63,590 bases of DNA, filler included, from Octopus bimaculoides (GCF_001194135.2; 6 parts of 5 records of this genome joined end to end with filler, not necessarily neighbours in it), one strand, 5' to 3'. Counted from the first letter of the whole stretch, positions 19,247-37,902 are shown. Made by a program: numbers and translations. The notes: generated by a model from the sequence alone, not told the origin.

Positions 19247-20248
19247 ATGTCAAAAACTCACGAGAAATTCAGTGAAGTAAGAGAAGAGAAGGTTTACCGC
19301 TGCAGATGGGAAAAATTATTTGAATTATGGGAGAAGTTCTTCTATATCAATGACGAGAAGCTACCATTCAGAACATCAAATCCTAAGAAGAAGTGCCAGT
19401 ATATTTTATATCGAATGATCTACCTCCTTACTCTAACAGACTGTATGGCGTTTTTATATCATTCATTCGAAGTTTTCTTCTTGGAATCTTTTGATAAGAC
19501 TTTGACTATCCTTATGCTGATACAATGGAAATTTTGCTACTTTTTTAATTTCTTCATAATGGTGTCGAAAATCAAACAATATAAAGCATTGAAAGAAAAT
19601 TTCATGAATAGCACACTTTTGTGTATGTGTGATAATTGCGATGATAAGATCTCCTTTTTGTTGAAAATAGCGAAAATCAGAACCGTTCTTCAAATTCTCT
19701 TCGTGCTAACGATGCATCCGATTTTAGCGTGTATTTTGCCCCTATTGCGCAATCAATCCAGCATTTTTAATGTATTTTTTTATCCTTTTCCTTTAAATGA
19801 TAATATATTTTCTCTGCTGTTTTTATTTAGTTGGTGGAAATTTGTACTAGTTGCTTTGCAAATTTTACCCCAAGCCAACTTTTCCTGGTTTTTAATCGAA
19901 TATCTTGTTTTAGAATTCGGAGTTTTGAGGGAAAAGTGCCAGGCTTTTTTCGTGTCAGGATGTGAAATGCAACCGAATGCTGAGTGGAATTACCGAAACA
20001 AAATGCTTGTGCATTATTGTACGAGGCACGAAGAAATGTGCAACTTACTGGAGGATGTCAACAAAATTATAAAGTATAGTATATCAGCAATAATGTTAAA
20101 TATGATACTAGGTCTATGTACTATATTTGATGGCCTTATAAACAATTTTCTCAGGCAAGATGAACTAGTATTCATATGTATCTTACCAACATTAGTTTTT
20201 CTACTGTCCCTCAAGACACTTCATACAGGCATGAATCTTCACAAAAAT
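19247..20248 (+). CDS. Gustatory-receptor-like (Grl/7TMIC) gene, long N-terminal coding exon 1a (334 codons, TM1-TM6)
   Basis: Stop-free ORF MSKTHEKF...GMNLHKN with six hydrophobic segments and the GR/OR-type H-x-x-M-x-x-L-L-E-D-V-N helix before TM5. AG acceptors at 19223-24 and 19234-35 precede the ATG. Phase-0 donor AAT|GTAAGT at 20249. Aligns end to end with exon 1b with only 3 residues of indel. Confidence 0.85.
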
Positions 20249-20769
20249 GTAAGTATTGTATCATTTTTAAAATTCAGGAGATAATGTCCTAAAATAAAGG
20301 CTTCCTAGTTTATTGCCAGAAATTCGAGTAAATTCGATTGGCAATCCTATGATGTAAAGTAAACCAGTAGACTCATTGCTAATCCACAAAGCTTTTACAG
20401 AAAAATAATCAGTATTAATTCCTCATTTACTCCTGGAGCCTTTGGGCCCACAAGGCCACTTACCAGGTTTTCATGGTGTATAAATGACCGAGATCGCAAC
20501 ATTCCCCTGAACGAAACGCTGGATTTTAAGGAATTAGAAGTGTCCAGTTACATAGATTACAGTACTTTACTGGTATAATATTCTGAAGGAATTAAAGTCA
20601 AACTTGGCATTAGTGGGAATTGAACCGAGGGCGTAAAGATTCAGAGGAAATACCGCTATGCTATTTAAGCGATGTGCTAAGGATTTTGCCATTTCACCAC
20701 CCACATGCTTCCTTTATGTAATTCTAATTCTATATATTTATCGCTTAACTGATGGTAACTGGCTGCTCC

Positions 20770-21060
20770 TTTACAATACTATCTTTAATCGAAGGTTCCA
20801 GTTCATCCGATCAATGGAAAAGCCTGCTTGGGAAATTAATGCAGTATTCTATAAACACGCGTACTCTTAACGTAATTCTCAGAGACTCGGCGTGACACAG
20901 TATGTGACAAGGCTGACATTTTGAAATAATTATAACTTACCGACAGGAGCAATGTGAAATAAAGTGTTTTGCTTAAGGACACAATACGTCTCTGGGGTTC
21001 GAACTGACGACGTTACGATCGTGAGCCGAGTACCCTAGCCACTGAGCCACACACCTTCAC
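20770..21060 (-). mobile_element. tRNA-derived SINE (same family as 37211-37578)
   Basis: Reverse-complement similarity to 37211-37560, including the tRNA head. Confidence 0.7.
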
Positions 21061-23305
21061 AAAAAGCGCTTTTTAATTGGATACATTAGTACATGTTAGG
21101 CCATCTCTGCTTTAACTAAACATATTTCTCATAAACATATTTCATTTCATATTCTGAAAGCGTCGCATGTATCTTGTATAATATTAATATTTACTCAGAT
21201 GATTTTCCGCACACAACATTTCGTATCAGGCTTCGTTTGTATAATGTGTTCTTTGAGGAAACTTGGCTGTTATTCGTAGCACGCTGAGTAACAGTCAACA
21301 CGACCCCACTCTTGCGAATATGTGCGCGTGTACATGTTAATAGTATTTGTGGTTAATCATGAACATAAAGAAAAATTTGAATTATTATAATTTTCTCCAC
21401 ATTATTAACGTAACACTTCACAGAATATCATATAATACTTACATGTAAACAAAGTGTTAAATGATAAGTTTCAGCGAATTATTTTTATTCAGAATAAATA
21501 ATGTTTTCTTGACTTCATTTTTTAAATTTCATAATAGTTGCCTATCAAAAAAGTATATGGCACGTGAATTTGTATCTCTCGGTCCGAAACAGACTCAGAC
21601 ACTGGCAGAACACGAACAACTGTTTCTAAAGAATTCATAGCAAGACATAAAGATTTGTATGCTATCGTTTTAGACTTGGCAACTACTGGGATGGCGCTGA
21701 AATAGTCACTCACTCTTACACTTGTACCTTAGTATCTCAAGCATGAAAATGCAAACATTGCATTACAAAGTTGTTGACACATAGTATATTGTAGGTAATG
21801 AGTGGGCATGCAACTCTTATTTATGCTTTAATTATTGTGATTTTTTAATTCGTTAATTGTATATAAATTTCACTGCTCCCTACGCTTTTGTGTAACTCTA
21901 CTTCATTCCCACTTCAACAATAAAGATCTCAGACTTTCTTGATATTGTATCATCCCTTTGTGGATATTGTATCATCCCTTAGACTGTTGGAAAAGAAAAA
22001 TATCACCTCTGCCCCTCCGCTTTCTGGTTATCACATCGTCTTTATATCATTATCTTACAAACATCTTCTTTTATGGAGGTGTGGCTGATTTTATGGTCAT
22101 AGTTAAATAGGGGTAGGGAAGTGTACCTGACATCAATTAATTTATCACCAACAAAAGGATCTTAACTTTCAATTCCCAATTGTTTTAATTTTAAGGGGAT
22201 GTAGACTATTTGCTGCATTAGGTCTGTTGAATGTGACAAGGATAAAAAGGAATGTTGCTATATCACCATTCTTCGTTATCAACCCCCATTATTTACTTCT
22301 GCCATTCTAAATTATAGCAGACTTTAGGTATTGTTAAGCTAAATTCATTCTGCTACAAAAATAGCAAATAGGAGAAATACATTTTAGTCCCTAGTACTGA
22401 TGAAGAAATTGCTAACAAAATTATAACAAAGTATCTTGAATTTTGGGAATCTATTTGGTCGTACGCATCGGAGGGGAGCGGTTTATTTCACATTGATGTA
22501 ATGTTTGCATTGACCGATTAAATAGAGCCACTTGAAACGGCCGTAAGTACTGATACCTGGACATCCTTGTTACTTGTTTGTGTGCGTGTGTGCATATGTG
22601 TGTGTGTGTGTGTGTATGTGCGTGTGTGTATGTGTCTGTGTCTATGTGTGTGTACTATTTGCTGCTGTTTAAATGAACTCATTTTCCCATTGTATTGGAG
22701 CGAAAGATTGAAAAGTGATTTTGGAAAAATACGTTTTCTCATAAATTCACTATATTCCCTCTCATATCCAATCCTTTCTATTTATCTATCTATCTATCTA
22801 TCTATCTCACACACTCATTCTCTCTCTCTTTTCTGTCTATTCATGTATCTACATGCATATATATATGTACATACACGCACACACACACACACACACACAT
22901 ACACACACACACACATACACACACACACACACACATATATATACATACAAATATGTATGTATTTATACACACACACACACACACACATCAAGCAAAGCAG
23001 TTTACACTGTAAATTTTGATTTGTTTAAACTGCTGTTACAAAATGTTTGTTAAGAGGGCTTGTATTATGTCTATAGCATTTGCTTCAGTAGCTTTCAAAG
23101 AAACATCGTATTACAATATATAGACCTACATATAAATGTTTACGCACACAAGATCAGCCCTTATATTATGAATAAGTCCGATGCACATACACACTCATTT
23201 GTACAATGCTCCACCATCAGTAAATATTCCTATCTATAAACTTCATTGATTTCCAATCAGTATCATCACATATGCATATAAGCACTCACGCACATGCCTA
23301 CATAC

Positions 23306-23363
<58 letters not shown>

Positions 23364-36264: not shown

Positions 36265-36495
36265 TACTCTTTTACTCTTTTACTTGTTTCAGTCATTTGA
36301 CTGCGGCCATGCTGGAGCACCGCCTTTAGTCGAGCAATTCGACCTCAGGACTTATTCTTTGGAAGCCTAGTACTTATTCTATCGGTCTAATTTTGCCGAA
36401 CTGCTAAGTTACGGGGTCGTAAACACACCGCCATCGGTTGTCAAGCAATGCTAGACACACAAACACACACACATACACACACACACACACACACA
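36265..36495 (-). mobile_element. Partial SINE, same family as 50975-51395
   Basis: Near-identical to 50980-51200. Truncated by an N gap. Confidence 0.8.
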
Positions 36496-37210
36496 NNNNN
36501 NNNNNNNNNNNNNNNNNNNNNNNNNNNNNNNNNNNNNNNNNNNNNNNNNNNNNNNNNNNNNNNNNNNNNNNNNNNNNNNNNNNNNNNNNNNNNNNNNNNN
36601 NNNNNNNNNNNNNNNNNNNNNNNNNNNNNNNNNNNNNNNNNNNNNNNNNNNNNNNNNNNNNNNNNNNNNNNNNNNNNNNNNNNNNNNNNNNNNNNNNNNN
36701 NNNNNNNNNNNNNNNNNNNNNNNNNNNNNNNNNNNNNNNNNNNNNNNNNNNNNNNNNNNNNNNNNNNNNNNNNNNNNNNNNNNNNNNNNNNNNNNNNNNN
36801 NNNNNNNNNNNNNNNNNNNNNNNNNNNNNNNNNNNNNNNNNNNNNNNNNNNNNNNNNNNNNNNNNNNNNNNNNNNNNNNNNNNNNNNNNNNNNNNNNNNN
36901 NNNNNNNNNNNNNNNNNNNNNNNNNNNNNNNNNNNNNNNNNNNNNNNNNNNNNNNNNNNNNNNNNNNNNNNNNNNNNNNNNNNNNNNNNNNNNNNNNNNN
37001 NNNNNNNNNNNNNNNNNNNNNNNNNNNNNNNNNNNNNNNNNNNNNNNNNNNNNNNNNNNNNNNNNNNNNNNNNNNNNNNNNNNNNNNNNNNNNNNNNNNN
37101 NNNNNNNNNNNNNNNNNNNNNNNNNNNNNNNNNNNNNNNNNNNNNNNNNNNNNNNNNNNNNNNNNNNNNNNNNNNNNNNNNNNNNNNNNNNNNNNNNNNN
37201 NNNNNNNNNN

Positions 37211-37578
37211 AGTGGAGGTGCAATGGCCCAGTGGTTAGGGCAGCGGACTCGCGGTCATAGGATCGCGGTTTCGATTCCCAGACCGGGCGTTGTGAGTGTT
37301 TATTGAGCTCCACGAGGCTCCGGCAGGGGATGGTGGCGAACCCTGCTGTACTCTTCCACCACAACTTTCTCTTACTTCATGTTTCTTTTGTGCTTGTAAT
37401 CCAAAGGGCCAGCCTTGTCGCACTGTGTCACGCTGAATATCCCCGAGAACTACGTTAAGAGTACACGTGTCTGTGGAGTGCTCAACCACTTGCACGTTAA
37501 TTTCACAAGCAGGCTGTTCCGTTGATCGGATCAACTGGAACCCTCGACGTCGTAAGCGACGGAGTGCCAACAACAACA
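37211..37578 (+). mobile_element. tRNA-derived SINE in Grl intron 2
   Basis: Box A TGGCCCAGTGG, box B GGTTTCGATTCC, (CAA)n tail. An inverted relative lies at ~20770-21060. Confidence 0.8.
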
Positions 37579-37812
37579 ATACAAATGTGAAATTTAAAGC
37601 TAATAGACTTATTCCTAGTAAATAATGTATTCCTTTCTGTATTCTTGAAAAACAATCATGCGATGTTTCATGAGGCAAATTTCGATCACAAAGAACGTTC
37701 CCAGGAAATACAAAGAACGTTCCCAGGAAATACTTATTATGACCCGGAACAAAATATCATCGGACGATATTAAAAGTATTTTTGCTAAATTCTTTCCTAC
37801 CTTTATTTACAG

Positions 37813-37902
37813 TTGACATTATTTCTCGATAGATTAAACACAACCCCAAGTGGTATAAGCGTTGGGGGCTTCTTTGTTATAAAGCCATCTTCTGTCCTAA
37901 CG
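37813..37902 (+). CDS. Grl exon 3 (30 codons, LTLFLDRLNTTPSGISVGGFFVIKPSSVLT), anchor domain/TM7a
   Basis: Strong acceptor tctttcctacctttatttacag| and donor ACG|gtaaat, phase 0-0. The peptide matches the GR/Grl pattern L-x-x-F-L-x-R-L...G-I-S-x-G-G-F-F-V-I...L-T. Confidence 0.85.

What the first reader, a model, noticed from the sequence alone, without database searches (positions are those of the whole stretch)
19247..37902. A cephalopod gustatory-receptor-like (Grl/7TMIC) locus hidden across four exons
Seen in sequence: two 6-TM exons plus two small phase-0 exons that join in frame as ...GMKLHQN|IHDIVEDLYAMNFKGLSTETRMK|LTLFLDRLNTTPSGISVGGFFVIKPSSVLT|. The small exons are absent from the ORF track. 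Established: insect GR/OR and animal Grl genes typically have a long first exon and three phase-0 C-terminal introns at these positions, and they form ligand-gated channels with inverted 7TM topology. The known octopus chemotactile receptors derive from nicotinic Cys-loop receptors, a different fold. Inference: this is a second, insect-type chemoreceptor channel family in an octopus-like genome, with lineage-specific duplication.
Basis: partly seen in the sequence, partly recalled or inferred. Interest (0 to 1): 0.9.

Follow-up and report, generated by a model that had tools for sequence, protein, structure and literature searches.

The report
Octopus taste-receptor-like gene, two alternative starts
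This stretch of Octopus bimaculoides DNA holds a real insect-type "gustatory receptor-like" ion-channel gene that is already partly in the databases; it looks like one gene with two alternative large first exons feeding one shared tail, not two duplicated genes.

Summary
Two paralogous ~1 kb exons, 1A (19247-20248) and 1B (31260-32270), each encode six membrane helices. Two small phase-0 exons (34060-34128, 37813-37902) have proper splice sites and join in frame to 1B. No assembly gap touches an exon, and a gap-free Octopus sinensis locus is collinear across every gap.

The family call holds too. With the last (TM7) exon, which lies beyond the piece, the protein passes Pfam 7tm_7. It has seven hydrophobic segments with the N-terminus inside and a TYVIVVLQT motif. 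Its predicted fold matches only insect OR/Orco/GR structures.

- The locus is not hidden. UniProt A0A0L8FL56 ("Gustatory receptor", O. bimaculoides) already uses both small exons, and GRLs are known in molluscs.
- There is only one set of tail exons for two first exons, in both octopus species. One species' gene model joins 1A to the tail, the other's joins 1B. Both first exons are intact and under purifying selection.

The best reading is an alternative-first-exon locus, like Drosophila Gr39a/Gr28b. No transcripts were available to prove it, and the function is untested. It is a new member of a known kind, of moderate interest.

The parts
19247..20248 (+). Alternative first exon 1A. It encodes 334 codons: the N-terminus and TM1-TM6. 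The donor is GTAAGT at 20249.
   Evidence: The ORF is and the splice site. It is 84% identical in protein to O. sinensis exon 1A, which NCBI model XP_036361416.1 joins to the shared exons. dN/dS is 0.44 (p = 5e-4) with no indels.
31260..32270 (+). Alternative first exon 1B. It encodes 337 codons: the N-terminus and TM1-TM6. The donor is the non-canonical GCAAGT at 32271.
   Evidence: The ORF is and the GC donor. The donor is identical in O. sinensis and is GTAAGT in a third species. The C-terminal 147 codons are the start of UniProt A0A0L8FL56. dN/dS is 0.57 (p = 0.012) with no indels.
34060..34128 (+). Shared exon 2. It encodes 23 codons in phase 0-0, part of intracellular loop 3.
   Evidence: It has AG and GT boundaries. 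It is 100% identical in protein in O. sinensis and is used in both gene models P0002 and P0003.
37813..37902 (+). Shared exon 3. It encodes 30 codons in phase 0-0, the TM7a/anchor region leading into TM7b.
   Evidence: It has AG and GT boundaries. It is 93% identical in protein in O. sinensis and is used in P0002 and P0003. Together with exons 2 and 4 it scores 32.3 bits on Pfam 7tm_7 positions 311-367.
20249..31259 (+). Sequence between exon 1A and the start of exon 1B. Under the alternative-first-exon model it is the first part of isoform A's intron, which runs on through exon 1B to 34059. It holds assembly gaps, microsatellites and a mariner fragment, but no receptor tail exons.
   Evidence: tblastn with exons 2, 3 and 4 finds nothing convincing here. 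The same interval in gap-free O. sinensis also has none. The weak exon-3-like stretch at 22203-22298 has no donor and carries a stop codon in O. sinensis.
32271..34059 (+). Intron after exon 1B (a GC-AG intron). It contains the 10-N gap at 33636-33645.
   Evidence: Collinear blastn blocks with O. sinensis flank the gap, and one of them spans it.
34129..37812 (+). Intron between shared exons 2 and 3. It contains a mariner HTH fragment (34496-34768), a dispersed repeat (36266-36495) and the 715-N gap at 36496-37210.
37903..38596 (+). The start of the last intron. The final exon (TM7b, with the TYVIVVLQT motif and the stop codon) lies beyond the end of the piece.
   Evidence: There is no match to IFGSLFTYVIVVLQTKRPADSSSS in the piece. 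In O. sinensis exon 4 lies 7.46 kb downstream of exon 3.

Best explanation
This is the single GRL locus of Octopus bimaculoides (GRL = gustatory-receptor-like, the insect GR/OR or '7TMIC' superfamily).

Architecture: it is built like Drosophila Gr39a/Gr28b. Two large alternative first exons, 1A and 1B, each encode the N-terminus and TM1-TM6, the part that forms the ligand or stimulus pocket in insect receptors. Each is spliced, one at a time, to one shared set of three small exons that encode intracellular loop 3, the anchor helix TM7a and the pore-lining TM7b. The third of these small exons lies outside the piece.

Products: the locus would give two receptor isoforms, with different sensing domains but the same pore and assembly module.

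Mechanism by analogy with solved insect GRs/ORs: each isoform would assemble as a tetrameric stimulus-gated cation channel with the N-terminus inside the cell.

Shown here: the exons, their splice sites and phases, family membership, the fold, conservation and purifying selection of both first exons, and the single set of tail exons in two species.

Inferred: that both isoforms are actually transcribed and spliced, that the protein has channel activity, and any sensory role.
For: Family:
- Pfam 7tm_7 (curated cutoff 26.6 bits): P0002 scores 35.0 and P0003 31.7.
- Window exon 1A plus the shared exons scores 31.2, and the shared tail alone 32.3.
- P0003 has seven hydrophobic segments. K+R counts are 35 in the loops predicted to be cytoplasmic against 5 in the others, which puts the N-terminus inside.
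- The TM7 motif is TYVIVVLQT, matching 3 of the 4 positions of (T/S)Yhhhhh(Q/K/E)(F/L/M) as given in PMC7746228.
- There are three phase-0 introns near the 3' end.

Fold:
- For the AlphaFold model of P0003, the top 21 PDB hits are all insect OR/Orco/GR structures (8v02, 6c70, 7lic, 8jme, 8vv3 and others), with TM-scores mostly 0.5-0.66 and probability 1.0. The next hit has TM 0.22.
- For the window's own 1B-E2-E3 product, the top 17 hits are again all insect OR/Orco/GR structures.

One locus with alternative first exons:
- The gap-free O. sinensis locus has the order 1A, 1B, E2, E3, E4, with only one copy of E2-E4. There are no tail exons between 1A and 1B in either species.
- The NCBI model joins 1A to E2 in O. 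sinensis, and the UniProt model joins 1B to E2 in O. bimaculoides.
- Both first exons end at the same phase-0 position with a usable donor that is conserved in both species.
- Both are intact with no indels, whereas the flanking introns show 6-9 indel events.
- dN/dS is significantly below 1 for both (0.44 and 0.57).
- A neutral sequence with the same number of substitutions would stay open less than 1% of the time.
Against: - No transcript evidence was available. The two junctions rest on automatic gene models that may be ab initio.
- No spliced, transcript-derived protein turned up in the 15-billion-protein collection.
- Exon 1B's donor is GC, not GT. That could mean weak or no splicing, although GCAAGT is the usual form of functional GC donors and it is conserved in two species.
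- Selection on both first exons is relaxed. Their nucleotide identity (about 90-91%) equals that of the flanking introns.
- The full-length isoform B composite scores only 19.2 bits on Pfam 7tm_7, below the cutoff.
- The AlphaFold models have low to moderate confidence (pLDDT 59 and 67, from an 8-sequence alignment), and TM7 is poorly modelled.
- The channel function and the sensory role are by analogy only.
Confidence: 0.68

Rival explanations
1. One functional gene plus a dead or orphan first exon. A partial tandem duplication copied only exon 1, and only one copy is still spliced to the tail. That could be 1A, with 1B skipped as intron because its donor decayed to GC, or it could be 1B, with 1A as a relic.
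For: - The GC donor on 1B in both octopus species contrasts with GT in a third species.
- Each species' annotation carries only one isoform.
- No transcript-derived protein was found.
- The exons are about as diverged as the flanking introns.
Against: - Both exons keep a ~1 kb ORF with no stops and no indels in two species. The probability under neutral substitutions alone is below 1%, and the introns nearby carry 6-9 indels per ~1 kb.
- dN/dS is significantly below 1 for both.
- The duplication is old (dS about 1.7, 46% identity), so a dead copy should have decayed by now.
- A 1B orthologue is also intact in a third species.
- GCAAGT donors are a recognised functional class (established knowledge).
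Confidence: 0.2
2. Two separate tandem genes. Copy A would have its own C-terminal exons, which are missing from the assembly or hidden in the gaps between 20249 and 31259.
For: Three assembly gaps (24948-24957, 26326-26399, 28445-28863) lie between 1A and 1B. There is also a weak exon-3-like match at 22203-22298, with E = 0.16.
Against: - The gap-free O. sinensis locus is collinear and has no tail exons between 1A and 1B.
- The sequence at the window's gaps corresponds to only 122 bp and 537 bp in O. sinensis.
- The 22203-22298 match has no donor site and carries a stop codon in O. sinensis.
- The NCBI model joins 1A directly to the shared exons.
Confidence: 0.04
3. The locus is a genuine GRL, but it is not an external chemoreceptor. 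It would serve another role known for non-insect GRLs and for Gr28b: light or heat sensing, internal signalling or development.
For: - PMC7746228 reports that LITE-1 and GUR-3 act in light detection, Gr28b isoforms in thermo- and light-sensing, another C. elegans homologue in egg-laying control, and Nematostella and sea-urchin GRLs in development.
- The family is tiny in octopus. Only one locus was detectable among annotated proteins, and there were 7 hits in 1.84 billion representatives. Typical chemoreceptor repertoires are expanded.
Against: There is no direct evidence against it. The relaxed constraint on the variable exons (dN/dS 0.44-0.57) with a conserved tail (0.19) is what is usually seen in ligand-binding chemoreceptors, but it is not specific to them.
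Confidence: 0.45

Closest known systems
Drosophila Gr39a (also Gr28b and Gr23a): alternatively spliced gustatory receptor loci
   Same: - Several large 5' exons in tandem, each encoding the bulk of the receptor (TM1-TM6), are spliced one at a time to three small shared exons that encode the C-terminus and TM7 (PMC2204066).
- The family is the same (Pfam 7tm_7), and so are the predicted fold and the phase-0 C-terminal introns.
- The shared exons are more conserved than the variable exons.
   Different: - It is from a mollusc, not an insect.
- It has only two variable exons, and one of them uses a GC donor.
- The introns are much longer (1.8-11 kb or more) and full of transposon debris.
- Alternative splicing is inferred from gene models and conservation, not shown by transcripts.
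- Whether the architecture is inherited or convergent is unknown.
Animal gustatory receptor-like (GRL) proteins of non-arthropods (Robertson 2015; Saina et al. 2015; reviewed in PMC7746228)
   Same: - Seven TM helices with the N-terminus inside.
- A TM7 motif of the form (T/S)Yhhhhh(Q/K/E)(F/L/M).
[quoted passage not shown]
- Small family size and very low sequence identity to insect GRs (10-14% in the structural alignments).
- GRLs are already reported in Mollusca.
   Different: - No paper in the searched library describes a cephalopod GRL.
- The last motif position is T rather than F, L or M.
- It has the alternative-first-exon layout.
Solved insect 7TMIC channels: Orco (6c70), MhOR5 (7lic/7lid), AaegOR10 (8v02), AgamOR28 (8v3c), DmGr64a (8jme), DmGr43a (8jm9), BmGr9 (8vv3)
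   Same: The predicted fold aligns over nearly its full length (TM-scores 0.5-0.66), and the models show long TM4-TM6 helices, which in these insect structures extend into a cytoplasmic anchor domain. These are the only significant PDB matches.
   Different: Sequence identity is only 10-15%. The models have low to moderate confidence. Tetramer formation, the pore and the ligand pocket were not tested.
Octopus chemotactile receptors (CRs; nicotinic-type Cys-loop pentamers)
   Same: Both are candidate ionotropic sensory receptors encoded in the same genome.
   Different: The fold and family are unrelated. There is no Cys-loop match in Pfam or in the PDB fold search. CRs are expanded, with up to 26 in O. 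bimaculoides (PMC11526382), whereas this GRL family appears to be one locus.

Membership tests
GR/GRL (Pfam 7tm_7, 7TMIC superfamily) | Sequence match to PF08395 above its curated cutoff (26.6 bits) | tested here: met
   Scores are P0002 35.0 and P0003 31.7, window 1A + E2 + E3 + E4 31.2, and the shared tail alone 32.3. Two caveats apply. The window-only products, which lack the out-of-piece TM7 exon, give no hit. The full isoform B composite scores 19.2, below the cutoff.
GR/GRL (Pfam 7tm_7, 7TMIC superfamily) | Seven transmembrane helices with an intracellular N-terminus (inverted relative to GPCRs) | tested here: met
   There are seven hydropathy peaks in P0003. K+R counts are 35 in loops 0, 2, 4 and 6 against 5 in loops 1, 3, 5 and 7, and the odd-numbered loops are short at 8-24 aa. 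This is a simple positive-inside count, not a dedicated topology predictor.
GR/GRL (Pfam 7tm_7, 7TMIC superfamily) | TM7 motif (T/S)Yhhhhh(Q/K/E)(F/L/M) | tested here: met
   The motif is TYVIVVLQT in exon 4 of P0002 and P0003, matching 3 of 4 positions, with the last being T. The motif definition comes from PMC7746228, which calls it diagnostic but not definitive. The exon that carries it lies outside the piece.
GR/GRL (Pfam 7tm_7, 7TMIC superfamily) | [quoted passage not shown] | tested here: inconclusive
   Three phase-0 introns split the last 77 codons. The first intron's position is shared by four more distant relatives. Positional identity with the insect or cnidarian introns was not checked, because no gene structures of those were on hand.
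GR/GRL (Pfam 7tm_7, 7TMIC superfamily) | Orco/OR/GR-type fold | tested here: met
   In Foldseek against the PDB, the top 21 hits and the top 17 hits are exclusively insect OR/Orco/GR chains, with probability 0.97-1.0 and TM-scores up to 0.66, followed by a sharp drop. The models are only pLDDT 59 and 67.
GR/GRL (Pfam 7tm_7, 7TMIC superfamily) | Forms a tetrameric stimulus-gated cation channel | not testable with these tools
   This needs expression, electrophysiology or cryo-EM.
Alternatively spliced GR locus of the Gr39a/Gr28b type | Tandem large 5' exons on one strand upstream of a single set of small shared 3' exons | tested here: met
   The order is 1A, 1B, E2, E3 (and E4), with one tail set only, in both O. 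bimaculoides and gap-free O. sinensis.
Alternatively spliced GR locus of the Gr39a/Gr28b type | Every large exon is kept functional (open frame, same-phase donor, purifying selection) | tested here: met
   The donors are GTAAGT (1A) and GCAAGT (1B) at the same codon position. dN/dS is 0.44 and 0.57, both significantly below 1, and neither exon has an indel.
Alternatively spliced GR locus of the Gr39a/Gr28b type | Transcripts that join each large exon to the shared exons | not testable with these tools
   Only gene models are available: 1A-E2 in XP_036361416.1 (O. sinensis) and 1B-E2 in A0A0L8FL56 (O. bimaculoides). No RNA data were available.
Cephalopod chemotactile receptors (Cys-loop) | Neurotransmitter-gated ion-channel ligand-binding and TM domains | tested here: not met
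   There is no such Pfam hit at E <= 10 and no Cys-loop structure among the fold matches.

The most novel reading that the evidence does not exclude
Octopuses keep a single, unstudied insect-type receptor locus that diversifies by alternative first exons. This would be the first such case outside arthropods. Its two isoforms would be genuine sensory channels, chemical, light or thermal, working alongside the Cys-loop chemotactile receptors in suckers, skin or the olfactory organ. The exon-swapping design would then be either an ancient protostome feature of GR loci or a striking convergence.
Probability: 0.15. Interest if true: 0.6.

Novelty: new member of a known kind. Interest (0 to 1): 0.35.

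Why it matters
Work on octopus chemosensation has centred on the Cys-loop chemotactile receptors. No paper in the searched library discusses cephalopod GRLs. This report provides:

- a full-length, checked gene structure for the O. bimaculoides GRL locus, where the database protein is a 224-residue fragment;
- evidence that the locus is conserved in O. 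sinensis;
- a specific, cheap test: do both 1A-E2 and 1B-E2 junctions occur, and where?

If both isoforms are expressed in sensory tissue, this is a tractable second ionotropic receptor type in octopus. It would also be a data point on whether alternative-first-exon diversification of GR loci predates arthropods. If not, it is one more small, divergent GRL family of unknown role, as in other non-arthropod animals.

Tried and rejected
- **Pfam on window-only products** (1B+E2+E3, and 1A alone): no hit even at E <= 10. The family signal sits mainly in the tail, including the out-of-piece exon 4.
- **Copy A's own small exons** between 20285 and 31223: only a weak exon-3-like match at 22203-22298 (E = 0.16). 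I rejected it because it has no GT donor and carries an in-frame stop in O. sinensis.
- **Exon 4 inside the piece**: absent.
- **Sequence search of the PDB** with the family profile: only noise, such as ribosomal protein S2 and NCX1. Fold comparison was needed.
- **Profile search of 1.84 billion representative proteins**: only 7 hits. One (P0005) is a spurious repeat protein. Three (P0004, P0006, P0007) are distant first-exon read-through ORFs from unnamed sequencing runs. A second indexed search with the wider alignment added nothing.
- **Rfam scan of the piece**: no RNA families.
- **Literature**: nine full-text searches for cephalopod or octopus GRL/7TMIC work found no paper that describes them. 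Robertson 2015 itself is not held, so I cannot exclude that it or other subscription papers list cephalopod GRLs.
- **The other long ORFs in the piece**: these are microsatellite translations or mariner fragments, not genes.

Full report
**What is in the sequence**

The usable piece (16526-38596) is 34% G+C and is interrupted by several N-runs. It holds two long ORFs on the + strand, at 19229-20284 and 31224-32291. From their first ATGs (19247 and 31260) they encode 334 and 337 residues that are 46% identical (E = 5e-107).

- Exon 1A ends at ...CACAAAAAT|GTAAGT (20248|20249).
- Exon 1B ends at the homologous codon...CATCAAAAT|GCAAGT (32270|32271). This is a GC donor.

All exon lengths are multiples of three, so the three introns are phase 0.

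**Assembly gaps**

No N-run lies inside an exon, and no reading frame has to cross one. I fetched the orthologous locus of Octopus sinensis (L001, CM016866.1, 47.8 kb, no N). blastn blocks between the window and L001 are collinear and on the same strand on both sides of every gap, and one block spans the 10-N gap at 33636-33645. Where the window has gaps, O. sinensis has only 122-537 bp of sequence between the flanking blocks, with no receptor-like coding sequence. Order and orientation are therefore supported, and nothing relevant appears to be hidden in the gaps.

**Source, and what is already on record**

A search of 5.8 billion proteins gave three hits:

- **P0002** is UniRef A0A0L8FL56_OCTBM, named "Gustatory receptor", from Octopus bimaculoides, 224 aa. 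It is 100% identical to the second half of exon 1B plus exons 2 and 3, and it continues with a fourth exon, IFGSLFTYVIVVLQTKRPADSSSS.
- **P0003** is XP_036361416.1, an uncharacterized protein of O. sinensis, 408 aa. It is the orthologue of exon 1A joined to the same exons 2, 3 and 4.
- **P0001** is an unspliced 1B-type ORF from an unnamed sequencing run.

The window is therefore O. bimaculoides. The small exons were already used by the 2015 gene model, so the locus is not "hidden". That model does lack the first 190 residues. Exon 4 is not in the piece. In O. sinensis it lies 7.46 kb past exon 3, whereas the piece ends 694 bp past exon 3.

**Family membership**

- **Pfam 7tm_7** (cutoff 26.6 bits). 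P0002 scores 35.0 and P0003 31.7. Window 1A plus the shared exons scores 31.2, and the 77-residue shared tail alone scores 32.3 on profile positions 311-367. The window-only products without exon 4 score nothing, and full-length isoform B scores only 19.2. So the signal is mostly in the tail.
- **Topology.** P0003 has seven hydropathy peaks. K+R counts are 35 in the N-terminus and the even-numbered loops against 5 in the short odd-numbered loops, which puts the N-terminus inside.
- **Motif.** TYVIVVLQT matches three of the four positions.
- **Introns.** There are three phase-0 introns in the last 77 codons. The first intron's position is shared by four more distant relatives, whose ORFs read through a GTAAGT or GTGAGT donor at the same residue.

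I could not compare the intron positions with insect or cnidarian genes.

**Fold**

| Protein modelled | pLDDT | pTM | PDB matches (Foldseek) |
|---|---|---|---|
| P0003 (8-sequence alignment) | 59 | 0.59 | Top 21 all insect OR, Orco or GR chains (AaegOR10 8v02, Orco 6c70, MhOR5 7lic/7lid, AgamOR28 8v3c, Gr64a 8jme, Gr43a 8jm9, BmGr9 8vv3). TM-scores mostly 0.5-0.66, probability 1.0. Next hit has TM 0.22, probability 0.28. |

The TM7 region is poorly modelled in both. Even so, the exclusive and full-length matches outweigh the weak confidence. A sequence-only search of the PDB finds nothing meaningful.

**One locus, not two genes**

tblastn finds only one copy of exons 2-4 in the window and in the gap-free O. 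sinensis locus. None lies between 1A and 1B. The O. sinensis layout is the same:

| Exon | Position in L001 |
|---|---|
| 1A | 10001-11002 |
| 1B | 23267-24277 |
| E2 | 27093-27161 |
| E3 | 30166-30255 |
| E4 | 37719-37784 |

The only candidate for a private exon of copy A (22203-22298, E = 0.16) has no donor site and carries a stop codon in O. sinensis. The NCBI model joins 1A to E2, skipping 1B. The UniProt model joins 1B to E2.

Both first exons look functional:

| Exon | Codons | dN/dS, O. bimaculoides vs O. sinensis | Fisher p (dN < dS) | Indels | P(ORF stays open under neutral change) |
|---|---|---|---|---|---|
| 1A | 334 | 0.44 | 5e-4 | 0 | 0.8% |
| 1B | 337 | 0.57 | 0.012 | 0 | 0.5% |
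| E2+E3 (shared) | 53 | 0.19 | not tested | not measured | not tested |

The flanking introns carry 6-9 indel events per 0.7-1 kb, while neither exon has any. The duplication is old (dS about 1.7 between 1A and 1B).

[quoted passage not shown] By established knowledge it is also the design of Gr28b and Gr23a.

My best explanation is therefore a single GRL locus that gives two isoforms, with different TM1-TM6 sensing domains and a common anchor and pore module.

**Caveats**

- No transcript data were available. The gene models may be ab initio, and no transcript-derived spliced protein exists in the collections searched.
- The 1B donor is GC in both octopus species and GT in a third species. 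GCAAGT is the normal form of functional GC donors (established knowledge), and its conservation argues for use, but a weak or dead donor cannot be excluded.
- Constraint on the variable exons is relaxed. Their nucleotide identity equals that of the neighbouring introns.
- Tetrameric cation-channel function rests on analogy with the solved insect receptors (PMC12635824).
- A chemosensory role is not implied. Non-insect GRLs and Gr28b isoforms also act in light and heat sensing, egg-laying control and development (PMC7746228).
- The family seems tiny. Only seven proteins in 1.84 billion representatives match at E <= 0.001, and one of those is spurious.

**Novelty and verdict**

- GRLs are known in molluscs (Robertson 2015, cited in PMC7746228).
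- This very protein is named "Gustatory receptor" in UniProt.
- The alternative-first-exon design is known in insects.
- I found no paper in the searchable library on cephalopod GRLs, but Robertson 2015 and other subscription papers could not be read.

What is new here is a corrected full-length structure, the evidence for two alternative first exons conserved in two octopus species, and the GC donor. That makes it a new member of a known kind, of moderate interest.

Noticed in passing
window 32271-32276; L001 24278-24283; L002 donor: Exon 1B uses a GC donor (GCAAGT) in both O. bimaculoides and O. sinensis. The orthologous exon in a third species (Logan run SRR11869385) has GTAAGT. A conserved weak donor on one of two alternative exons could help set the isoform ratio.
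   Followed up: partly
window 31240-31259 and 19222-19246; L001 and L002 equivalents: An acceptor-like 'tttttgcag' lies 11 nt upstream of the 1B ATG and is identical in three species. A similar 'tgcag...ggtag' lies upstream of the 1A ATG. This hints at an upstream non-coding 5' exon, possibly shared by the two first exons rather than each having its own promoter.
   Followed up: partly
window 17658-17945, 27680-28034, 34496-34768: There are mariner/Mos1-type transposase fragments in the flank and introns of the locus, with Pfam hits to HTH_48 and Transposase_1.
   Followed up: yes
window 36266-36495: A dispersed repeat of about 230 bp abuts the 715-N gap. It has at least three copies in the O. 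sinensis locus (L001 5072-5289, 12545-12704, 46805-47038), so it is probably a SINE-like element. No Rfam or tRNA-like match was found.
   Followed up: partly
window 27453-30844 and 24315-26797: These stretches between exons 1A and 1B are much longer in O. bimaculoides than in O. sinensis: 3.4 kb against 0.54 kb, and 2.5 kb against 0.12 kb. The extra sequence is insertions of microsatellite-rich and transposon DNA, which is also where the assembly gaps sit.
   Followed up: partly
window 38283-38359, 24821-25280, 22869-22935, 16526-16694: Long microsatellites, (TTA)25, (AT)n/(ATAC)n and (AC)33, produce many of the spurious long ORFs in the six-frame list.
   Followed up: yes
L003 724-1797 (Logan SRR11869384); P0006 and P0007 (Logan): Three distant relatives (14-18% identical) are single-exon read-through ORFs that end at the same exon-1 boundary with GTAAGT or GTGAGT donors. 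They suggest further divergent GRL loci in other, unnamed and probably cephalopod genomes.
   Followed up: partly
window 22203-22298: This stretch is weakly similar to shared exon 3 (L..L..LN.T...IS..FFVI.P...L). It might be the last trace of a lost private tail of copy A, but it has no donor site and carries a stop codon in O. sinensis, so it may equally be chance.
   Followed up: yes
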